A stretch of 64,000 nucleotides of DNA from Octopus sinensis (GCF_006345805.1 NC_042999.1:137206001-137270000); one strand, 5' to 3'; positions 1,123-62,674 are shown, counted from the first letter of the stretch. Program-made: numbers and translations. The notes: generated by a model from the sequence alone, not told the origin.

Positions 1123-3107
1123 TAGTTAGTTAGTTAGTTAATTTTTTGGCTCAAAAAGCAAAAAAGCAAGGCCATGTAGGGGGACATGGAGCTATGTACA
1201 GGGTGGTGTTCATGTAAAGAGTTCAGGCCACTTGTGGTCAAGGGAGACTTTGAACCGAGCGGTCGTCGGCATCTTCACCATCTCGTCTGGCAGCTTATTC
1301 CACGGATCCGCAACCCAGACGGAGAAAGCCCCTCTCCTTCGATTGAGATGAAATCGTCGCAGATAGAGCTTTTCGGAATGACCCCGCAGCCGACGCTCTG
1401 GAGCAGGAGTGAAGAACAGCTCCTTTGAGAGGTTACACTTTCCACTTATGATGTGAGCAAGAATGAGATCACCACGGCGTCGTTGTTTTTCTAGAGAATA
1501 TAGGTCGAGCGTCTTCAGCCTTTCTTCATAAGACAAACTCTTGAGACCAAGAACCATGCGGGTAGCCAGCTTCTGGACTCTTTCGAGATGCTGTATGTCT
1601 TTGAGGAGATAAGGAGAAGAGGCTTGAATCCCGTACTCCAATATGGGTCTCGCCAGCGTGACATAGAACGGTAAGAATATGGCTGCTGTGAGCATTCCGA
1701 ATGACCGTCGAATCAAGAACAGAACTCCGCATGCTTTGTTGGCAGCATGGACACACTGGGCTGAAGGCGAAAAGGAGGAATCCACCAAGATACCCAGGTC
1801 CTTTACCTGATCGGTCCTCTCCAGCAGCAGATGACCTGGCTCGAAATCAAGTTGAGTTGCAGGAGGAGAGCCAACAGGCAGATGACAGCATTTTGACACG
1901 TTCAGACACAGGTCCCATTCGTTAGACCATCTCCAAATTTGGTGGAGGCATCGACGAAGATCCTCTATATCACCGCGAGTAGCGACCAGTTTGACATCGT
2001 CGGCAAATAGAAGGGTGTGTTACGTGAGGTCATCGGGCATGTCATTTATGAAGACTAAGAACAATAAGGGCCCAAGCACTGAACCTTGAGGCACGCCACT
2101 GCGCGCACTGGAGACGTCGGACCGCGAACCATTAACTTGGACTTGGAAGGAGCGATCTGAGAGGAAGGCACCAACCCATCATACAATATCCAGATGGAAA
2201 CTATATGCTTGAAGCTTGACAAGTAATAGGCGGTGGTTTACCGAGTCAAAAGCTTTGGCAAAGTTCAATAAAATGATGTCAACAGCATCACTATCATCGA
2301 GGATGCGCGTCACCAATTCTTCCATTACCAGTAAGTTGGTCAAGCATGATGATCTCTTCGGCACGAAGCCGTGTTGGGAATCAGAGATAGAGGCTGTGTT
2401 TTGGAGGTGGAGCATCATACTTTTCTTAAGGATGGTTTCGAACGTCTTGCTGATTATTGATGTAAGGGAAACCAGTCGGTAGTTAAGCGGGTCTTCGCGG
2501 CTCCCTTTCTTGAAAATTGGGCAGATTATCGCTGTTCTCCAGTCCACAGGTATAACACCCATTGCCAATGACATATTGAATAAATGTGTTAAGGGCTCAC
2601 AGATGACCGGAGCCAACGCTTTGATAACTCGTGGGTGTATGCCGTCAGGGCCGTGACCCTTGTTGACATCGAGGCCTTGAATAACGTGTTCGACTTCGTC
2701 CCGCGTGATGACCAATCGAAGCATTGGAGGTACCAATCTATCAAATGGAGGGGGTTCACAACCATCATCTTGTTTGAAAATAGTTGAAAAAGCCTCCGCA
2801 AATAATTGACTCTGTTGATAAGGGTCCTCAATCGATATGCCTGTTGAGTCTACCAACGTTGTAATTTGGTTGTTCAAGTGGGAATTCTGTTGGACATAGG
2901 CAAAGAAGGTTTTTGGATTGCTACTGACATTTGCCGCGATTCTGTATTCATATCTGAAGCGTTCTTCCTTTTCAATTTTCATGGCTCAGTCTCGTTGAGT
3001 TTTGTACACCTCAAAAGCTGCAGTCGAATCCAGATTTTTGAATTCAGCCCAAGCAATATCTCTGAGTCAAAGTTCTCGTTTAACCTTCTTCGTCACCCAG
3101 GGCTCCA
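1123..3107 (-). mobile_element. 5'-truncated CR1-clade non-LTR retrotransposon (RT and C-terminal region), disrupted
   Basis: ORFs 2179-2982 and 1210-1899 plus the linking sequence give GPDGIHP, QHGF...SCLTNLL, FAKAFDSVNH, GVPQGSVLGPLLF, LFADD (1996-2007), KDLGI, LERVQ, RRRGDLI, RGH and WNKLP. Two in-frame stops and a frameshift; (TAAC)n 3' tail at 1123-1141. Confidence 0.95.
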
Positions 3108-16465: not shown

Positions 16466-17589
16466 TAAAAGATCTGATAGTTTTATACTGAGTGAGCCAC
16501 AACTAAATACACAAATAATTTAATCATGACTTACCATGTTCTTAATTAAAATCTGCTGAAGTCATATCTGCCTCTCATCCTTCTAAGTTAATAAATAGCT
16601 AGCAAGTACTGGGGTTAATGTAGTCAGTTATACTTCTATCACTATAATAAATTTTGATGTCTTGTTACTTCTTATGTAAAAATTAAATTATACACTCTTC
16701 TCTCTTCACTATATGCGGTTATGTGCCTTTCCGCTCTCTGTTGGTATATCAAACTGTTCTGATTGATGATACTTAGATGAATGCATGATCAAGTTCAATA
16801 CAGCTCCTTTTGATAAAGCTGTAGGTATTTTACTTCAAATGTTTTTATTTGATACTTTCTATTACTACTGGAATGTCAATGTTTATAATAGTAAGAGGAC
16901 AGGGGACTGGTTGAGTCTTCTACAGCACCAGATAAAAGGTCTTGTATTTCATTAGCTCTCTTTACATTTATATTTCAGACTCCACCAAATTCAGTTCTGC
17001 CTTTCATTATTCTGGTGTTGATAAAATAAAGAACCAGTGAAATGCTGTAGTCAATTTGACTAGATTCTCTCACAAAATTTTGTTTATTAGAAGTTATAAT
17101 TAAAGGGCAACAGATTGACACAATCATTTGGGTGCTGGACTAAAATTTAGTTTTTATCATCATCATCATCATCGTTTAACGTCATCATTTTATATTTTGA
17201 GTTAAAATTCTACTGAGGTTTAATATTTTTATTCATATTTCAGAGTTCACTAAACTAAAAGACAGTAAAGTAATGGAGGTTAATATGAAGTTCTGGCTTT
17301 GTGTCTGTGTAATAAATCAATATTTAGTCATGTTTTTACATTCTGAGTTCAAATCTCATCAAAGCCATCTATGTTTCATCTTTCCCAGAGTAGATAAAAT
17401 GAGTACCAGTCAGATTCTGAATGGAGTCATTCTAATTCACTCCACCCTTCCTATGTATTAAGAAGTATTTCTTAATACATTAATGTTTTGTTAGAAAGTA
17501 TCATCAAAGCCTCTAATTTATATTCTAGTATATCTTAGATTTTATATTTATAATTTAGAAGGAAATTAAGTATTATGAGTGATAAAAAG

Positions 17590-17790
17590 GTGGTTAGCTG
17601 CACTGGATGAAATACTTATTGGCATTTCTTCCAGCTTTTGACATTCTGAGCTCAAATTCTGCTGAGGTCAGCTTTACCTTTCATCCTTTTGAGGTTGATA
17701 CAATAAGTAACAGTCAAGCACTGGGATCAATGTAATTGATCCCCCCCCCCAAAAAAAAAATTGCTGACCTTGTGTCAAAATTAGAAAGAA
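17590..17790 (+). mobile_element. SINE family A copy inside the spacer of the 106 bp inverted repeat
   Basis: ttctgagctcaaattctgctgaggtcagctttacctttcatccttttgaggttgatacaataag. Confidence 0.8.
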
Positions 17791-18255
17791 TTATCTCTAG
17801 TAATAATATTATAAGTCTGAAGATATAAAAAACATCAAATATATTCTCTCATTTGAAGACAAATGTTCTAAAAATTGCTTGTTTTTACAAGCAAGAAATT
17901 TACATAGTTTGTTTTTCCTATGTTGGGGTATAAGCATATTTGATGCCAGGAAGTACAAAAAGCATCTTGGCTAAGGACACAGGTGTAATTATCTCTGGCA
18001 AAGACAACTTCTATGACACCATGCCAACTCATTCAACCATCCCAAGCTGATTACAAATATCAATAACCATAATAAAACAGCAATAGTAGATACTAATAAT
18101 TAACAACATTTTGTTTCTTATGCAAATAATTAAAAGTTTGGTTTAGATAGTTGGCTATATAGGAAGATATGAAGCTGTGATAGTCTGTATCTAATTAATT
18201 ATGGTAGATCCGTTCCAAACTCGACATTTTTCGTTTTCTGTTCTGCTTTTTTCAG

Positions 18256-18272
18256 TTTAATGGCTCTTAAAG
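18256..18272 (+). other. Candidate 17 nt cassette microexon (tttaatggctcttaaag) in the NKAIN intron
   Basis: Long pyrimidine tract tttttcgttttctgttctgcttttttcag| with TGC near the AG, and donor AAG|gtaaag; several CpGs upstream. Confidence 0.35.
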
Positions 18273-18969
18273 GTAAAGAAATTTCCTTCTAAATTATATA
18301 TATAAAATTTAAGATATACTAGAATATAAATTAGAGGCTTTGATGATACTTTCTAACAAAACATTAATGTATTAAGAAATACTTCAAGTTTTCAATAATG
18401 ATATCTAAATATATGCATATGTGTCAGTTATTAACAAAATAATTGTCTATTTAAAATTTGAAAATTTGAAGCTTTAAGATAATGACTAACTTCTTTGTTA
18501 AAACTGTAATAAAAAATTGCAATGTTGTAATGATATTGTTTTTCTTAGATAAGCACAAAAATGAGAATTTGTTTTCACTTGGAAGTAGTACCATTCATGC
18601 CATTCTCAAGGTTATTAACAATGTATTAATGCAGTGGATGGGGTTCAACAGGAGAACAAAGCAATACCATTGATTAGGTTTGACAAGTATTTATCACTGC
18701 CTGTAGCTCACTTGTCTTTGTAATAGTAGTATTGTTGTCATAGTAATTGCAACACTGATTGCTTTCTTACGTACATCAATTATTGAAGGGCAAGAATATT
18801 AATTGGCATAAATCTCAGATTAAGACTGGAACTTGTTTTATTGACCAAGGTAGAGTGGTCAACAAAGCTAATGTAAAAGTATTTGAACTTGGAACAGAGA
18901 AAGAGAAAATATTTAAAGCAATTGATGATGATTTGAATGTATGGGGTCTGTTATTGTAATGATAAATTG

Positions 18970-19916
18970 TTTCTGATTTAGGCTCTATGCCAGCAATTTT
19001 CAGGAGAGTGGGATGGGAGTGGAGGGGTTGGCTGATTTCATCAACCCCAGTACTTACTTAATGGTACTTAATTTTATGGATCACAAAAGGCTGAAAGGTC
19101 AAGGTGACTTTGGCAGTATTTGAACCCAGAGTGTAAAGTCCAAGAAAAATTCAGTATGACATTTTGTCCAATGCTGTAATGATTTTTTCATGTCAACTTG
19201 CTACCTTTATTATAATATTAATATTAATAATGGTTTCAAATTTTGCCACAGGGGCAGCAATTTTAAGGGAGGGGATGAGTTGATTACATCGACCCCAGTG
19301 TTGTACTGGTACTTATTTTATCGACCCTGAAAGGATGAAAAGTAAAGTCAACCTCAGTGGAATTTGAACTCAGAATGTAGCAATGGGTAAAATGCCACTA
19401 ATCATTTTGTCCGGCATGCTAATGCCTCTGCCAGCTTGCCACCTTTATAATAGTAGTAATAATAATAATGATAATAATAATAGCCACAAGGACAGCAATT
19501 TTGAGGGAGGGGATGAGTCGATTACATCAACCCCAGTGTTCAACTGGTACTTATTTTATCAAACCTAGATGGATGAAAGGCAAAGTCGACCTCAGCTGAA
19601 TATGAACTCAGAACGTAGCGATGGGTGAAGTACTGCTAAGCATTTAGCCCAGCATGCTAACTATTCTGCCAGCTTGCCACCTTAATAATAATAATAATAA
19701 TAATGATCCTTTCTACTATAGGCACAAGGCCTGAAATTTTGGGAGAGGGGGCTAGTCAATTAAATCAACCCCAGTGCTCAACTGGTACTTATTTTACTGA
19801 CCTCAAAAGGATGAAAGGCAAAGTCAACCTCTGCAGAATTTGAACTCAGAATGTAGAGGGAGACAAAATGTCACTAAGCATTTTGCCCAGTGTGCTAACA
19901 GTTTGGCCAGCTCGTC
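18970..19916 (-). mobile_element. Head-to-tail stack of four tRNA-derived SINEs (family A, Deu/Nin-like core)
   Basis: Copies at about 18970-19190, 19231-19446, 19482-19684 and 19705-19916, each with a reverse-complement B box (atttgaactcag) and core ggatgaaaggcaaagtcgacc; separated by (TAA)n. Confidence 0.85.
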
Positions 19917-21094
19917 ACATTTTTTTCACATCTGGAACACAGTAACAAAATTATAATAGAGGATTATAGTTGTTTGTTCAACTCTAGTGTTTACTATAAA
20001 TTTTTTTTTTTTTCAACCTAAAAGAATGTGAGGCAAAGGTGACCCCTAGAATGATTTAAACTTGGAATCTATAGAAAGTTGGATTAAATACTGCAAAACT
20101 TTAAATCTGATGTTCTAACATTCTGTTACCTTTTTGATATTAATTACTTCTCACTTTCATACAAAACTATGAATTAGAATTGACTCTTGTAAAAATTTTA
20201 TTGAAGCAGAAGCAAAATTGCCCCTGGTAAAGTTTTGAGCTTCAGAACATGTGAGTGAAAATTATCCTCATTTTTAACATCCACTTTTCCATGCTTGTAT
20301 GGGTTGGACAAATGTCTATTGAATCGAAACAGATTTTCTACACTCAAATACCCTTCCCGTCACCAAACCTCATCTGTTTACAAGCAAGGTCAAATTTTCT
20401 CATGGCCAGGCATAATTTCACAGAATATTGGAAATGAATGACGCTGCTTATATCGCAATGAGACTCATTTACAGCTATCAAAGAGACATAAACACTCTTG
20501 CTTCTGCATACATATGTCTGTGTTTGTATGTCTATCTATCTATCTAATCTATTGCATACACACACAGACACACATATATATATATATGTATGTATGACTT
20601 CTGCAAGGCAAGGCTTTGGCCAGCCTGGAGCTATAGCAGAAGATGCCCAAAATACCATGCTGTAGAGCTGAACCTGAAGCCATGTGGTTGATAAATAAAC
20701 TTCTTATCCACACAGCCATTTCTGTGCATATAGTATATTTTGAATTATAATTCTAGAAAAAAGTTCACCACTGATCTTAGATTTAATTAAAAACTTCAAT
20801 TTCTTTCTTTAGGGGATGTTATTAAACTGCTAACCTTTGCTTTACCTGTTTTTGATCATTTATTTGATACAGGTATCCAGCAAAGGGCTATTCATTTGCT
20901 CACTGAAAGGGCTAGTCACTTGTTCACTGCATTTCAAATTACGACAGTGACAAGGAGTGTCTGTAATTTGATGGACTTCATCCAAAGAGCACTGGTTTTT
21001 CACCAATATTTATATCCTTTGCAATTTCCATTTATTGAATACCACTCCCAAAGTATTGGTCAACCAGATGCTTCCCTAGCATTTGCTCAGCATT

Positions 21095-30564: not shown

Positions 30565-30751
30565 CATGCATGCATACATACAAAGAACGAGAAATAGCAT
30601 GTGGTAACAGAGATCAATAAAATCAATTGTTTAGTTTCAGCAGAGTGGATGTCCATGTGTGTGTGTGTCAGACTATCAGAGCCAGTATCTGTTATTATTA
30701 ATATTGTTATTTAAAATTTTTTTCAATATTGTTATTTTTAATTTTTTTCAG

Positions 30752-30832
30752 TATTCAATATGGAGTTTGCTATGGATAGGTTGGAATATTTTTGTCATTT
30801 GTCTCTACTTAGAAATTGGTATATTAAGCAGG
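30752..30832 (+). CDS. NKAIN: NKAIN internal coding exon (equivalent to vertebrate exon 3; third TM helix), YSIWSLLWIGWNIFVICLYLEIGILSR
   Basis: Acceptor tttaatttttttcag| and donor AGG|gtaagt; 81 nt, phase 0-0. Translation matches the NKAIN motif YAVWLVLWVxWNxFxICFYLExGxLS (family sequence recalled). Confidence 0.92.
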
Positions 30833-41940: not shown

Positions 41941-42458
41941 TCATCATAATTATCACCTGTCATTTCTCTTTCTTTTTAAAGCTTTGTGCTTTATATAATT
42001 AATAATCATCATAATTACATATTAATAATGACTATATTGCTAACTTAGCAGTAATAGAAAATAATGAATTTAAATATTTTTAGATACATTTCTCTCTTCT
42101 TCATCTGATTCAAAATCATACCTAGATTAGTTTCGTCTTTCCCGTCTTTAACACTTAAAATAATATCAGTTACATACTGATCTGCTTGTATTGACTATAT
42201 AGTTTCCATCTTTTTGATCCAGTGACTCATGAAAATAAATTAAGTCTACCAAGATATTAATGACAGAATAATTATTCTATCAGTTTACTTTTTACTTTGA
42301 ACTGAAAGTGTCACCAACACTATCTGACTATGATCTATTGTCCTTGTAAAAATGTTCTGTGTGTAGTTAATTTTGTCTGGGTTGTGATTAGTGTTCTCTT
42401 AATGCTAAGGAAGTAAACAAACAAAACAATAGAATACCACTCCAAGTAATTTCTGGTA

Positions 42459-43748
42459 CGAGGGGCGTTCAATAAGTAATGCCCCTGACCCACTTCCCAT
42501 AGCAGTAGAGCAATGAAATTTGGCACAGTTATTAGTCTTTTTCTACATAAAAACCACCCAGAGTTACATTTCTCCCATCGTTTGATGCAGCTCTGGAGAC
42601 CGTTTTTGTAGAAGACCCCAGCTTGGTCCTCCAACCATGACGTGACTTCAGAAATCAAGGCTGCATCATCTGGGAAACGCTTTCCTTTCAAAAACAACTT
42701 CATGACTGGGAAGAGGGGAAAATCAGAGGGTGCAAGGTCAGGAGAGTAGGGGGGATGGGGGAGGAGTTCATAGCTGCACGCCTGTGCTTCTGATCTGGTG
42801 ACATGGGAGTTGTGGACCGGAGCGTTGTCCTGCAGCAGGAGGATGCCTTTGTTGATCTTGCCTCGCCTCTTGATTTTGATAGCTTCTCTTAATTTCCTCA
42901 AAAGTGAAGCATAATAGGCTCCTGTAATTGTGGTACCCTTTGCCAGGAAATCTGTCATCACTACTCCGTCCTGGTCCCAGAAGACTGTGAGCATGACCTT
43001 ACCAGCGGAGGGCTGCACCCTTGCCTTCTTTGGAGGAGGTGAGTCACGGTGCTTCCACTGCATTGACTGGGCTTTGGTCTCTGGATCATAGTGATGGACC
43101 CAGGTTTCATCCTGTGTAATCAGACTTTTGAAAAATTTTGACTCATCTTCTTGGCACATCTCCAAATTCATCTTCAAGCACTCGACGCGTTCTTGCTTCT
43201 GGAAAGGTGTGAGCAACCTGGGAATCCATTTGGCAGACACCTTTTGCATGTGCAGATGGTCATGAATGATAGTTTCCACAGACCCGGTATTAATCTTGAC
43301 CTCATGGGCTATTTGGCGAATAGTTATGCGTCGATCTTCCAAAATGGCAGCCTCAACTTGACGGACAGATGCCTCATCAATGGCAGAAGAGGGTGACCAG
43401 ATCTGGGAGCTGTTTCCACAGAGTTCCGACCATGTTTGAATTCATTATGCCAGGGTTTTACAAGGTCATATGATGGGGCATCATCACCATAAGTTACTTT
43501 AATTTCATCAAAAGTCTTCCGTGGTGTGCGTCCTTTCAAATACAAAAACCGGATCACTGCTCGCCACTCAACAGGCTCCATTTCACACTTGACTCAGTTC
43601 AAACACCTGTAAATCAGAAACCACAATTAGTTCAGAGCTGTAATTTGCCACTTAATTTATAGAGATATAAATAATTGCACTTGCAAAATTTCAGCTAGAT
43701 CAAACAACTGCAAGTGGGTCAGAGGCATTACTTATTGAACATCCCTCG
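42459..43748 (-). mobile_element. Near-intact mariner transposon (1290 bp, DD34D), probably irritans-like
   Basis: 37 bp TIRs cgaggggcgttcaataagtaatgcccctgacccactt (42459-42495) and 43712-43748 with 3 mismatches; TA at 42457-58 and 43749-50. Transposase has WIPRLL, DETW, QDNAPVH and HPPYSPDLAPSDF, with 34 residues between the last two Asp. Two frameshifts (near 43390 and 42565). Confidence 0.96.
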
Positions 43749-45753: not shown

Positions 45754-46314
45754 AGAAGCCAACAAAAGAGAATCTACCATAATCTTTTGAGCAGGTAGAC
45801 ATAGTCACCAAATGTCTTTAAACTGACATTCAATCAAGTGTATTATGAAAACAAGAAAAATATTGGATAATGTAGCCCAGGGTTCACTATTTCTGGAGAA
45901 AAGATGGAATGACCATTGCTACTACTTTTGTTTATAGTGGTGAATTCTACCACCTGTAGTACTTACTTACAGCGAGGGAGACTAATTTGATGAAAGCATG
46001 TGTCCTCTGATTGCAGACCATGGACTATTAATTTGTTTGCTAGTCATTGTCTTGTACATGGCACTCTTTACAGTCATCCTTGCTCTCTTTAGCAAACTGT
46101 GTAAAATAGTCCAGCCGTGATCATCTCCTCTTATTTTCAGGCAAGATATCATCATCATCATCATTTAACGTCCACTTTCCATGCTAGCATGGGTTGGACG
46201 GTTCAACTGGGGTCTGGTGAGCCCGAAGGCTGCACCAGGCCAGTCAGATCTGGCAGTGTTTCTACAGCTGGATGTCCTTCCTAACGCCAACCACTCCGAG
46301 AGTGTAGTGGGTGA

Positions 46315-46710
46315 TTTTATGTGCCACCGACACAGGTGCCAGACGAGGCTGGCGAACGGCCACGCTCGGATGGTGTTTTTATGTGCCACCGACACAGGTG
46401 CCAGACGAGGCTGGCGAAAGGCCACGCTCGGATGGTGTTTTTATGTGCCACCGACACAGGTGCCAGACGAGGCTGGCGAACGGCCATGCTCGGATGGTGT
46501 TTTTATGTGCCACCGACACAGGTGCCAGACAAGGCTAGCAGACGACCATGCTCGGATGGTGTTTTTTATGTGCCACCGACACAGGAGCCAGATGAGGCTG
46601 GCGATCGGCCACGATCGGATGGTGATTGTTACGTGCCCACAGCATGGAGGCCAGTCGGCTACGGCCACGTTTGGATGGTTTTCTCGTGTGCCACCGGCAC
46701 TGGTACCACA
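46315..46710 (-). repeat. Seven-unit 55-63 bp minisatellite in the RTE 3'UTR
   Basis: GTGCC anchor at 46321, 46383, 46445, 46507, 46570, 46633, 46688; unit ttttatgtgccaccgacacaggtgccagacgaggctggcgaacggccacgctcggatggtgt. Confidence 0.95.
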
Positions 46711-46882: not shown

Positions 46883-48052
46883 CTAGTCTTGCCGGGTCTT
46901 CTCACGCACAGCATACTTCCATAGGTCTTGGTCTCTAGTCATTTCCTTGGTGAGACCTAAAGTTCGAAGGTCGTGCTTCACCACTTCGTCCCAGGTTTTC
47001 CTGGGTCTACCTCTTCCACAGGTTCCCTCAACTGCTAGGGTGTAGCACTTTTGCACACAACTGTCTTCAGCCATTCTTGTCATATGACCATACCAGCGCA
47101 GCCGTCTCTCTTGCACACCACAACTGACGCCTCTTAGGTTCAACTTTTCTCTCAAGGTACTTACACTCTGACGATTATGAACACTGACATTACACATCCA
47201 TCGGAGCATACTGGCTTCATTTCTTGCGAGCTTACGCATATCCTCAACAGTCACGGCCCATGTTTCACTACCATGTAGCATGGCTGTACGTACACATGCA
47301 TCATACAGTCTGCCTTTTACTCTGAGTGAGAGGCCTTTTGTCACCAGCAGGGGTAAGAGCTCTCTAAACTTTGCCCAGGCTATTCTTACTCTAGCAGTTA
47401 CACTTTCAGCACACCCACCCCCGCTACTGACTTGGTCTCCTAGGTTGCGGAAGCTATCAACTACTTCTAGTTTGTCTCCCTGGAACGTGGTAGAAGTTGG
47501 TCTCTGCACGTTTCCAGAGTTTATTTCTCCTGAGCATCTGCCACATACGAAAACTATCTTCCCAGTTAGCCTACCTTTGACATTGCTGCACCTCTTATGT
47601 GTCCATAGCTTACACTTGGTGCACCTTATAGAGTTTCTACCTACACCTTTTTTACAGATCGAGCAGGGCCATCTACCTGAAGTCGTTTGTGGTTGGTCCA
47701 CCTTCCTACTTATTAGGACTTTGGTTTTGGCTAGGTTGATTCTAAGGCCCTTCGATTCTAATCCTTGTTTCCACACCTGAAACTTCTCCTCCAGTTCTGA
47801 TAGTGACTCAGCAATTAGAGCAAGGTCATCAGCATAGAGGAGCTCCCAGGGGCATCCTGTCTTGAATTCTTCCGTTATTTCCTGGAGGACTATGATAAAT
47901 AGGAGGGGGCTGAAGACTGAACCTTGGTGGACCCCAACCTCTACCCGGAATTCTTCACTGTACTCATTGCCTACCCTCACCTTACTAGCAGCGTCTCTGT
48001 ACATGGCTCGCACAGCTCTCACTAACCATTCATCTATCCCTAGTTTCCTCAT
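46883..48052 (-). pseudogene. RTE ORF2 C-terminal 389 aa (reverse transcriptase, PHD finger, thumb/C-terminal region); uninterrupted but 5'-truncated
   Basis: Provided ORF; RT motifs as above; C4HC3 zinc finger at 47534-47665. Confidence 0.9.
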
Positions 48053-56150: not shown

Positions 56151-56663
56151 GGCCGTTTGCCAGCTCTGTCTGGCCCCGTGTCGGTGGCACGTAAAAGCAC
56201 CATCCATTCGTGGCCGTTTGCCAGCTCTGTCTGGCCCCGTGTCGGTGGCACGTAAAAGCACCATCCGTCCATGTCTGTTGCCAGCCTCGGCTGGCCCCCG
56301 TGCCGGTGACACGTAAAAGCACCGTCCGCTCGTGGCCGTTTGCCAGCTCTGTCTGGCCCCGTGTCGGTGGCACGTAAAAGCCCCATCCGTTCGTGTCCGT
56401 TGCCAGCATCGCCTGGCCCCGTGCCGGTGACACGTAAAAGCACCATCCGTTCATGGCCGTTCGCCAGCTCTGTCTGGCACCTGTGCAGGTGGCACGTAAA
56501 AAACACCCACTACACTCGCGGAGTGGTTGGCGTTAGGAAGGGCATCCAGCCGTAGAAACACTGCCAGATCTGACTGGGCCTGACGAAGCCTTCCAGCTTC
56601 ACAGACCCCAGTTGACCCGTCCAACCCATGCTAGCATGGAAAGCGGACGCTAAACGATGATGA

Positions 56664-58884: not shown

Positions 58885-59110
58885 TGTGTGTGTGGTACAT
58901 ATTTCTGCATGTGTGTGTAGATGTACATATGTGTGTAGATGTACGTGTGTGTGTGTATATGTATGTGTGTGTATATGTGTGTGTGTATGTGTGTATATGT
59001 ACGTGTGTGTATGTGTGTATATGTACGTGTGTGTATATGTGTGTATATGTACATGTGTGTATGTGTGTACATGTATGTGTACATGTGTGTGTGTGTATGC
59101 ATATATGCAT
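58885..59110. repeat. Compound TG/TA microsatellite with repeating higher-order units
   Basis: Repeats such as gtgtgtatatgtacgtgtgtgtat; source of six overlapping low-complexity ORFs. Confidence 0.9.
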
Positions 59111-60674: not shown

Positions 60675-60911
60675 ATCAATTTAACACCCACTTTTCGATG
60701 CTTGAATGAGTGAGATAGACTTTCTGTGGCTAGATGTGCTTCCTGTTGCCAACACTGGCCTATTTCACACAAGTCTTCCTAGTCCTTTGGAAATGAACAA
60801 CACAATGACAAAACTTACTTCCATGGAAGATTGCAGACAAATACCACTACTTGTATGATGGAGGCATCTGCATACAGTTAGCAAGCAATATCAAGACATG
60901 AATATACACAC

Positions 60912-60984
<73 letters not shown>

Positions 60985-62461: not shown

Positions 62462-62674
62462 ACACGAGAATTATACATTTTAAATATTGGAACGAAGAAT
62501 AAAAGCTGGTGGTTAGAACATGGCATTGGTTGTCAGGTGACAAATAACACATGGGAGAAAAATTACCATGGAGAAACCAGTAGACCAATTCCACCTGAAG
62601 AATTTGTAGAAGGGTGTCTTGTAGAATATTATTATGTTGAATTCATTCATGCTGCTGTGCAGTGTTTGTTTTCA
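62462..62674 (+). CDS. NKAIN: NKAIN internal coding exon (equivalent to vertebrate exon 4; extracellular loop and start of TM4), TRELYILNIGTKNKSWWLEHGIGCQV...EGCLVEYYYVEFIHAAVQCLFS
   Basis: Acceptor ttcttaattttacag| and donor TCA|gtaagt; 213 nt, phase 0-0. SWWxExGxGC and GCLxEYxYxExxHxxxQ motifs, with the two conserved loop cysteines typical of NKAIN proteins. In frame with the 30752 exon. Confidence 0.93.

What the first reader, a model, noticed from the sequence alone, without database searches (positions are those of the whole stretch)
17450..18385. Young 106 bp inverted duplication that loops out a candidate microexon in NKAIN pre-mRNA
Seen: arms 17462-17567 and 18280-18385 are 104/106 identical (U-U and G-U in the plus-strand RNA) and match no repeat family seen elsewhere in the window. 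The right arm begins 7 nt after the donor of a 17 nt exon-like element. The left junction carries its own 12 bp fold-back (atgtattaagaa-gtat-ttcttaatacat). Established: such junctions are typical of template-switch or templated-insertion repair; long intronic duplexes are ADAR substrates and can promote exon skipping or back-splicing; coleoid cephalopods have exceptionally extensive neural A-to-I editing. Inference: a recent local rearrangement created a dsRNA element that could gate a cassette exon in a neuronal Na/K-ATPase partner gene.
Basis: partly seen in the sequence, partly recalled or inferred. Interest (0 to 1): 0.7.

Follow-up and report, generated by a model that had tools for sequence, protein, structure and literature searches.

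The report
Young inverted duplication in NKAIN intron
A 106-base piece of an octopod NKAIN intron was recently copied backwards about 0.8 kb upstream, most likely by faulty DNA-break repair; it would form a long RNA hairpin, but nothing shows that it controls a real exon.

Summary
Arms 17462-17567 and 18280-18385 are 104/106 complementary (one G-U, one U-U), 712 nt apart. Homology stops sharply at both ends, and there is no other copy in the 64 kb window. Shuffled sequence gives inverted matches of at most 18 nt.

The gene context holds by inference. NKAIN (PF05640) exons lie on the + strand at 30752-30832 and 62462-62674, and the upstream exons are outside the window. TE proteins are closest to Octopus.

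The best explanation is a single, recent, local fold-back or template-switch repair event with no demonstrated function. The left copy looks derived:
- It abuts a 3'-truncated SINE.
- It is bordered by 6-7 nt direct repeats.
- It carries a 9-nt extension that a snap-back on the right arm's own end predicts (113/115 over 17453-17567).

The TIR-transposon reading has no target-site duplication.

The "microexon" (18256-18272) is not supported. Equally good acceptor/donor pairs occur 31 times on this strand. It is 17 nt long and reads FNGS-stop in the phase-0 intron.

RNA editing and splicing effects are plausible in principle, because the predicted RNA duplex is -148 kcal/mol. They cannot be tested here. 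No octopod genome, reads or RNA-seq were reachable, so copy number and the ancestral state remain open. Ordinary; low interest.

The parts
18280..18385 (+). Right arm, the probable source (ancestral) copy of the 106-nt segment. It is unique intronic sequence.
   Evidence: The inverted-repeat pair is defined. No border direct repeat of 5 nt or more. No SINE homology. No homology in the flanks.
17462..17567 (+). Left arm, the probable derived copy. It is the reverse complement of 18280-18385 with 104/106 identity.
   Evidence: It is bordered by short direct repeats: ATTAAG at 17457-62 and 17565-70, AAGTATT at 17463-69 and 17568-74. It lies in the 141-bp gap between two SINE copies.
17453..17461 (+). 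A 9-nt extension (ATGTATTAA) outside the left arm. It is a direct copy of 18367-18375 and the reverse complement of 17472-17480. Read as snap-back synthesis from the end of the copied strand: a GAA/TTC stem with an ATAC loop at 18376-18385.
   Evidence: The predicted product rc(18280-18385 + rc(18367-18375)) matches 17453-17567 at 113/115. The chance expectation for the 9-mer in the arm is about 0.004.
17453..17480 (.). Left-junction hairpin with a 12-bp stem and a 4-nt loop. It exists on this side only.
   Evidence: 28-nt self-inverted match; fold, -11.2 kcal/mol. The right arm has no counterpart.
17332..17451 (+). SINE copy 1, truncated at both ends. Its 3' truncation falls 1-10 nt from the left junction.
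   Evidence: nhmmer with a SINE profile built from 12 window copies matches profile positions 50-166 of 234 and ends at 17451. BLAST to the consensus covers positions 50-163.
17568..18279 (+). The 712-nt spacer, which is the loop of the RNA hairpin. It holds a full-length SINE (17593-17814) and unique sequence with no coding or RNA-family signal.
   Evidence: SINE; no protein homologue for any stop-free stretch; no Rfam match.
18256..18272 (+). The 17-nt exon-like element TTTAATGGCTCTTAAAG. Good acceptor tract (UGC at -12 to -10), moderate donor (gtaaag). Judged a chance pseudo-exon.
   Evidence: sequence; 31 comparable pairs on the + strand; reads FNGS-stop in phase 0.
30752..30832 (+). NKAIN exon A (YSIWSLLWIGWNIFVICLYLEIGILSR), phase 0 at both ends. 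It is the first NKAIN exon downstream of the finding, 12.4 kb away.
62462..62674 (+). NKAIN exon B (71 aa).

Best explanation
This is a by-product of one recent DNA repair or replication error, with no demonstrated function.

Proposed sequence of events (inferred):
1. A break occurred just 3' of a SINE copy, at about 17452.
2. One resected 3' end, or a stalled nascent strand, folded back and copied 106 nt of the same intron lying 0.7-0.9 kb downstream (18280 to 18385) in reverse orientation.
3. The new strand came off its template and snapped back on its own end (TTC pairing with GAA), adding 9 more nucleotides.
4. The other break end captured it. The 3' tail of the SINE was lost in the process.

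The result is a 106-bp inverted repeat with a 712-bp spacer inside a >30 kb phase-0 intron of an octopod NKAIN gene. Two substitutions have accumulated since.

Shown: the anatomy, the uniqueness within the window, the sharp ends, the junction signatures, the gene context and the in-silico duplex.
Inferred: the direction of copying (left derived, about 65-70% sure) and the break/fold-back pathway.

When the intron is transcribed, the arms should pair into a long, AT-rich, near-perfect dsRNA. It would be an ordinary promiscuous ADAR substrate, like the many inverted SINE pairs nearby. I expect no consequence for the NKAIN protein. The adjacent 17-nt 'exon' is most likely a chance pseudo-exon.
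For: - Inverted repeat of 104/106 with sharp boundaries and no flanking homology.
- Far beyond chance.
- Single pair in 64 kb, while the window's real repeat family (the SINE) has about 19 hits at 64-86% identity.
- The arms have no SINE homology.
- Asymmetry points to the left copy as derived. SINE 1 ends at profile position 166 of 234, exactly at the left junction. Retroposition truncates 5' ends, so a 3' truncation implies a later break or deletion.
- 6-7 nt direct repeats border only the left copy.
- The 9-nt one-sided extension is reproduced by a snap-back model at 113/115, with 9-mer chance about 0.004.
- The pathway is documented experimentally. In yeast, fold-back priming at a resected break, unwinding, and capture by the other end with 0-5 bp microhomology give inverted templated insertions of 2 to about 150 bp (PMC11724301).
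- Short-range template switching creates perfect hairpin stems in one step (PMC5453318 and PMC8794818).
- No functional signal in the spacer or arms: no Rfam family, no tRNA, no protein homologue.
Against: - No outgroup, second individual or reads could be examined. The ancestral empty site, the direction of copying and the single-copy status genome-wide are therefore unproven.
- The priming junction (17567/17568 against 18279/18280) shows no flush microhomology unless the ATT of the ATTAAG border repeat is counted.
- The two junction readings exclude each other. Either the 9-nt extension is new synthesis, or ATGTATTAAG pre-existed with a 6-nt duplication. Each leaves one coincidence of p about 0.005.
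- A pre-existing 12-bp hairpin at the left site could instead have triggered a switch in the opposite direction, making the right arm the derived one.
- The 712-nt loop is much longer than in the experimental fold-back events (41 nt).
Confidence: 0.72

Rival explanations
1. The new dsRNA is a regulatory element: it loops out and gates a 17-nt neural cassette microexon of NKAIN, is hyper-edited by ADAR, and tunes splicing.
For: - A stable 106-bp duplex is predicted, -147.8 kcal/mol for the arms, and it dominates the MFE and centroid folds of 17400-18450.
- The donor of the exon-like element lies 7 nt from the stem base.
- The acceptor has a long pyrimidine tract and a UGC at -12 to -10, a motif associated from my own knowledge with SRRM4-type microexons.
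- The gene is a neuronal-type NKAIN in an octopod-like genome.
- Inverted repeats of 30-40 nt are enough to change splicing outcomes in reporter constructs (PMC4201285).
Against: - Comparable acceptor/donor pairs occur 31 times on the + strand and 18 on the - strand. About 0.45 are expected in any 924 bp, so the proximity is unremarkable.
- 17 nt shifts the reading frame, and in the phase-0 intron it reads FNGS-stop.
- The donor has A at +5.
- The structure is very young (2 differences), so it cannot be a conserved regulator.
- No expression, junction-read or editing data are available.
- A 17-nt exon could not sensibly circularise.
Confidence: 0.04
2. The 924-bp unit (17462-18385) is a non-autonomous DNA transposon (MITE, foldback or MULE-like) with 106-bp terminal inverted repeats that later received a SINE. 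Alternatively, the arms are two independent insertions of one short repeat family.
For: Long, near-identical terminal inverted repeats are the hallmark of such elements. The genome is TE-rich, with a mariner-like transposase, LINE RT and many SINEs in the window. Copy number outside 64 kb could not be checked.
Against: - No target-site duplication of 3 nt or more at any symmetric boundary shift of +/-6 nt.
- The termini (GAAGTATTTC...) match no superfamily motif I know.
- There is no other copy or fragment in 64 kb.
- A transposon does not explain the one-sided 9-nt hairpin extension or the SINE truncation at the left junction.
- Exact scans of JGI metagenome and IMG/VR contigs for an arm 23-mer found nothing, but those collections are not expected to hold octopus DNA.
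Confidence: 0.1
3. An assembly or sequencing artefact: a chimeric or mis-joined read created a false inverted copy.
For: Inverted chimeras occur in long-read and amplified libraries. No read data were available here.
Against: - The arms differ at two positions.
- The copy is short and discrete, with a 712-bp spacer that contains an old SINE.
- The junctions have the fine structure of biological repair events.
- Missed-adapter artefacts invert whole read ends, not 106-nt internal blocks (my own knowledge).
Confidence: 0.05
4. The same kind of event in the opposite direction. The left region, including a pre-existing 12-bp hairpin, is ancestral. The hairpin stalled synthesis and provoked a template switch that wrote the right arm.
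For: Quasi-palindromes promote template switching (PMC5453318; yeast quasipalindrome work listed). The arm homology ends inside the hairpin, 3 nt before its loop.
Against: - A 12-bp perfect hairpin sitting by chance exactly at the boundary is unlikely.
- The right arm has no border repeats.
- The SINE truncation sits at the left site.
Confidence: 0.09

Closest known systems
Fold-back (snap-back) templated inverted insertions at double-strand breaks (yeast MAT system, PMC11724301; SD-MMEJ/TMEJ snap-back synthesis, PMC5728401 and PMC2943611)
   Same: A reverse-complement copy of nearby sequence on the same molecule. Discrete ends. Little or no microhomology at the capture junction. The copy length (106-115 nt) falls inside the reported 2 to about 150 bp range. 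A secondary short hairpin-primed extension is present at one end.
   Different: The loop between template and copy is 712 nt, against 41 nt in the yeast system. No clear priming microhomology is visible. This is a germline-fixed event in a mollusc, inferred from one sequence and not observed experimentally.
Short-range template-switch mutations (four-point model of Loytynoja and Goldman, PMC5453318; creation of RNA hairpins and de novo miRNAs, PMC8794818 and PMC10710096)
   Same: One mutational event creates a perfect reverse-complement repeat able to form a hairpin stem in the transcript. It may replace pre-existing sequence between the switch points, here the SINE tail.
   Different: The events described there are mostly tens of nucleotides with short loops. 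This one is 106 nt with a jump of about 0.8 kb, and it is not in an RNA gene.
Intronic inverted-repeat dsRNA as ADAR substrate or splicing modifier (inverted Alu pairs, PMC526178; short intronic repeats and circRNA, PMC4201285)
   Same: An intramolecular long duplex in a pre-mRNA intron of a neural gene. It is more perfect (98%) than the inverted SINE pairs around it (76-81%).
   Different: It is not made of a repeat family. It does not bracket a verified exon. Editing and splicing effects are untested.
MITEs and foldback transposons with long terminal inverted repeats
   Same: Two near-identical inverted termini about 100 bp long around a non-coding interior of under 1 kb.
   Different: No target-site duplication, no second copy in 64 kb, and an asymmetric extra hairpin at one end only.

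Membership tests
Template-switch / fold-back templated inverted insertion | A reverse-complement copy of a nearby segment on the same chromosome | tested here: met
   104/106 identity, with the source 712 nt away.
Template-switch / fold-back templated inverted insertion | A discrete copied block: homology ends abruptly at both switch points | tested here: met
   The 150-nt inner and outer flanks align no better than shuffles.
Template-switch / fold-back templated inverted insertion | Junction signatures: microhomology, short duplications or secondary snap-back synthesis | tested here: inconclusive
   A 9-nt snap-back extension (113/115 fit, p about 0.004) and 6-7 nt border repeats are present. 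The two readings compete, and the priming junction has 0-3 nt of microhomology.
Template-switch / fold-back templated inverted insertion | The ancestral state lacks the copy (outgroup or polymorphism) | not testable with these tools
   No octopod genome or reads were reachable. ORF look-ups and searches were empty. The only indirect support is the SINE 3' truncation at the left junction.
TIR DNA transposon / MITE | Target-site duplication flanking the terminal inverted repeats | tested here: not met
   Only a 2-nt AA at the exact boundaries, and none at shifts of +/-6 nt.
TIR DNA transposon / MITE | Multiple dispersed copies in the genome | tested here: inconclusive
   None in the 64 kb window. 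The genome-wide count could not be obtained.
Neural microexon (3-27 nt cassette exon) | Length of 3-27 nt with functional splice sites | tested here: inconclusive
   17 nt, a good acceptor and a moderate donor, but 31 equally good pairs occur on this strand of the window.
Neural microexon (3-27 nt cassette exon) | Preserves the reading frame or gives a productive isoform | tested here: not met
   17 is not a multiple of 3, and it reads FNGS-stop in the phase-0 intron.
Neural microexon (3-27 nt cassette exon) | Junction reads or cross-species conservation | not testable with these tools
   No RNA-seq data and no orthologous loci were available.
ADAR hyper-editing substrate (long intronic dsRNA) | An intramolecular, near-perfect duplex of tens of base pairs or more | tested here: met
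   106 bp with one U-U and one G-U, -147.8 kcal/mol. It is present in both the MFE and the centroid fold.
ADAR hyper-editing substrate (long intronic dsRNA) | A-to-G clusters in RNA relative to DNA | not testable with these tools
   No transcriptome data were available.
NKAIN gene (host locus) | Match to Pfam PF05640 above the curated cut-off, on the + strand | tested here: met
   99.3 bits against a cut-off of 25.9, profile positions 65-156. The best database relative is a Haliotis NKAIN2-like protein at 63% identity.

The most novel reading that the evidence does not exclude
A lineage-specific, newly born 106-bp intronic dsRNA in octopus NKAIN is heavily A-to-I edited in neurons. By masking or exposing the adjacent 5' splice site, it switches a 17-nt poison microexon (FNGS-stop) and so tunes NKAIN dosage. 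This would be a caught-in-the-act case of a repair accident creating an editing-dependent splicing switch.
Probability: 0.03. Interest if true: 0.55.

Novelty: new member of a known kind. Interest (0 to 1): 0.17.

Why it matters
The locus is a clean, well-resolved natural example of how one repair or replication error can create a long, perfect RNA hairpin in an intron. The junction detail (a one-sided snap-back and loss of a SINE tail) fits experimentally defined fold-back insertion models. It could serve as a marker for octopod population or species comparisons, and as a defined non-repeat substrate for asking how cephalopod ADARs treat a new dsRNA. It tells us nothing yet about NKAIN regulation. 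Large TE-rich introns are expected to hold many such structures.

Tried and rejected
1. Orthologous or allelic loci.
- Exact look-ups of four window ORFs next to or inside the element (62, 63, 128 and 54 aa) found nothing.
- A concatenated query of all stop-free translations of at least 26 aa from the arms, spacer and flanks found no protein at E <= 0.01.
- The source species' NKAIN is not in the protein collection. The best hit is Haliotis at 63% identity.
- Comparison between species or individuals was therefore impossible.

2. Copy number. Exact scans for an arm 23-mer in JGI metagenome contigs and IMG/VR found nothing. These collections are not expected to contain octopus DNA, so this says little.

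3. Is the arm a SINE tail? MAFFT forced part of the left arm against the SINE tail. A profile search (nhmmer, all filters off) ends SINE 1 at 17451 and gives no hit for either arm. Rejected.

4. Older, longer inverted repeat with a gene-conversion tract. Rejected, because there is no residual homology in the flanks.

5. Structured RNA gene, tRNA or miRNA in the arms or loop. No Rfam match in 15-21 kb apart from sub-threshold simple-repeat hits at 20505-20583, and no tRNA.

6. hpRNA or siRNA source acting in trans. Considered unlikely, because the arm is copied from the same intron and so has no other evident target. Not testable here.

7. Upstream NKAIN exon in the window.

Full report
**1. 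The observation**

Region 17300-18550 was read directly. The repeat finder reports arms 17462-17567 and 18280-18385 of 106 nt, 98% complementary, with 712 nt between them. A base-by-base comparison gives 104/106. The two differences are at 17538 (G) opposite 18309 (T) and at 17548 (T) opposite 18299 (T).

The longest exact inverted match within 4 kb is 76 nt in the window. In ten shuffles it is 13-18 nt.

The arm has no other copy in the 64 kb. The best other blastn-short hits are 12-14 nt, and self-BLAST depth over the arms is 1, meaning only the partner. It is the most perfect inverted repeat in the window. The rest are inverted SINE pairs at 76-81% and microsatellite matches.

Homology stops sharply. 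The 150-nt inner and outer flanks align no better than shuffled sequence.

The 12-bp fold-back at the left junction (17453-17480) and the 17-nt exon-like element (18256-18272, 7 nt before the right arm) are both present.

**2. Context**

Two NKAIN exons lie on the + strand:
- 30752-30832 (27 aa, phase 0 at both ends)
- 62462-62674 (71 aa)

Together they match Pfam PF05640 at 99.3 bits over profile positions 65-156 of 206. The nearest database relatives are gastropod NKAIN proteins at 63-71% identity.

The exon for the conserved N-terminal part (profile positions 1-64) is not found anywhere in 1-30751, even with a molluscan query and permissive settings. The finding therefore lies, by inference, in a phase-0 intron of more than 30 kb that begins upstream of the window. 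It is 12.4 kb upstream of exon A.

A LINE reverse-transcriptase ORF in the window has its best named relatives in Octopus bimaculoides (84%) and O. vulgaris (82%). This supports an octopod origin.

The neighbourhood is full of one SINE family of about 212-234 bp, with 19 BLAST hits to its consensus:
- A partial copy (SINE 1, 17332-17451) ends just before the left arm.
- A full copy (17593-17814) lies inside the spacer.
- A head-to-tail array of three to four copies lies on the opposite strand at 18957-19899.

**3. What the element is**

The arms are not SINE-derived. A profile built from 12 copies and run without filters ends SINE 1 at 17451 (profile position 166 of 234) and gives no hit to either arm. 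An apparent similarity in a forced multiple alignment was spurious.

The whole 924-bp unit has no target-site duplication. There is only a 2-nt AA at the exact boundaries and nothing at boundary shifts of +/-6 nt.

The two arms are not equivalent. Three features mark the left copy:
- It abuts the 3'-truncated end of SINE 1. Retroposition truncates 5' ends, so a missing 3' tail implies a later break or deletion at that point (the mechanistic statement is established knowledge).
- It is bordered by 6-7 nt direct repeats: ATTAAG at 17457-62 and 17565-70, and AAGTATT at 17463-69 and 17568-74. The right arm has none of 5 nt or more.
- The 9 nt just outside it (ATGTATTAA, 17453-61) are a direct copy of 18367-75 inside the right arm.

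That last feature is what one expects under a specific sequence of events. A strand copied from the right arm up to 18385 folds back on its own end (TTC 18383-85 pairing with GAA 18376-78, loop ATAC). It is then extended by nine nucleotides. The predicted product matches 17453-17567 at 113/115, and the chance of the 9-mer is about 0.004. This also explains why a hairpin exists at only one end.

**4. Most likely mechanism**

I commit to a single recent repair or replication error with these steps:
1. A break occurred near 17452.
2. Fold-back or template-switch synthesis ran along 18280 to 18385 on the same molecule.
3. The new strand dissociated.
4. A short snap-back extension followed.
5. The other break end captured the strand, with loss of the SINE tail.

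Every step has an experimental precedent. In yeast, a resected break end folds back at a microhomology, Pol delta copies 2 to about 150 bp, the new strand is unwound, and the other end captures it with 0-5 bp of microhomology (PMC11724301). Snap-back synthesis is a feature of SD-MMEJ and Pol theta end joining (PMC5728401 and PMC2943611). Short-range template switches create perfect hairpin stems in a single event (PMC5453318 and PMC8794818).

The anatomy is shown. The pathway and the direction are inferred.

Weak points:
- The priming junction has 0-3 nt of microhomology.
- The loop is 712 nt, much longer than in the experiments.
- The snap-back reading and the 6-nt duplication reading of the left border exclude each other. 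Each leaves one small coincidence unexplained.
- A pre-existing hairpin could have driven the opposite direction of copying.

Two differences in 106 nt make the event young compared with the SINE copies, which are 14-36% diverged from their consensus. I do not give an absolute age.

**5. Function**

Folded as RNA, 17400-18450 is dominated by the arm duplex in both the MFE and the centroid structure. The arms alone give -147.8 kcal/mol. They are 20% G+C and contain 84 adenosines. Such a duplex is a textbook promiscuous ADAR substrate (established knowledge; PMC526178 for inverted Alu pairs), so editing is plausible if the intron is transcribed where ADAR is active. That is an expectation and has not been tested.

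The proposed microexon does not hold up:
- With criteria no stricter than its own features (at least 11 of 14 pyrimidines, YAG, GTRAR, 3-60 nt), there are 31 such pairs on the + strand and 18 on the - strand. About 0.45 are expected in any 924 bp.
- It is 17 nt long, so it shifts the frame.
- Entering from a phase-0 intron it reads Phe-Asn-Gly-Ser-stop.
- Its donor has A at +5.

The one point in its favour is a strong pyrimidine tract with a UGC at -12 to -10.

The spacer and arms have no Rfam family, tRNA or protein homologue. Because the arm was copied from the same intron, small RNAs made from it would have no evident trans target.

**6. Rivals**

- Transposon with long terminal inverted repeats: about 0.10. 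It has no target-site duplication and no second copy, and it does not explain the asymmetry. Genome-wide copy number is unknown.
- Same event in the opposite direction: about 0.09.
- Assembly artefact: about 0.05. The two mismatches and the biological-looking junctions argue against it.
- Regulatory microexon gate: about 0.04.

**7. What could not be done**

No octopod genome, reads or RNA-seq are reachable with these tools. Exact ORF look-ups, a concatenated translation search and DNA pattern scans were all empty. A literature search found nothing on octopus NKAIN structure.

**8. Verdict**

This is a real, young, local inverted duplication with informative repair junctions in an NKAIN intron. 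It is a new member of a well-known kind of mutation. The functional story is unsupported and, for the microexon, contradicted by frame and by background frequency. Interest is low (0.17).

Noticed in passing
window 18957-19899 (- strand): A head-to-tail tandem array of three to four SINE copies (TRF period 238, 79% matches). The copies form inverted pairs of about 81% complementarity over roughly 100 nt with the SINE at 17593-17814, which sits inside the loop of the 106-bp inverted repeat. This gives competing intronic dsRNA structures.
   Followed up: partly
window 30700-30755: A 25-bp unit (AATATTGTTATTTAAAATTTTTTTC) is tandemly duplicated 2.2 times and runs straight into the acceptor of NKAIN exon A. 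The polypyrimidine/acceptor region of a real exon is thus itself a recent local duplication.
   Followed up: no
window 46310-46637 and 56151-56501: A G+C-rich 61-62 bp minisatellite (5-6 units) occurs twice about 10 kb apart, apparently in opposite orientation. It produces long spurious ORFs with repeated CHRHRCQTRLA-like motifs.
   Followed up: no
window 42335-43581 (-), 46883-48052 (-), 1210-2982 (-): TE coding remnants: a mariner-like transposase split into two ORFs, a 389-aa LINE reverse transcriptase with a PHD finger (best named hits Octopus bimaculoides 84% and O. vulgaris 82%), and further RT fragments near the window start.
   Followed up: partly
window 17289-17324 and 17332-17451: A SINE 3'-tail fragment (profile positions 173-208) lies directly upstream of SINE 1, which is itself 5'-truncated at profile position 50. 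The area left of the finding is a patchwork of broken SINE pieces, which suggests repeated local rearrangement.
   Followed up: partly
window 20505-20583: Sub-threshold Rfam hits to mir-297, mir-466 and mir-1277 (36 bits against gathering scores of 81-100) on both strands. They are most likely a TG/TA-type simple repeat and not a miRNA.
   Followed up: no
window 58908-59099 and 60906-60976: Long (TG)n-rich and (AC)n microsatellites about 1.8 kb apart, just upstream of NKAIN exon B. They give many 72-84% inverted matches, another potential low-complexity intronic duplex.
   Followed up: no
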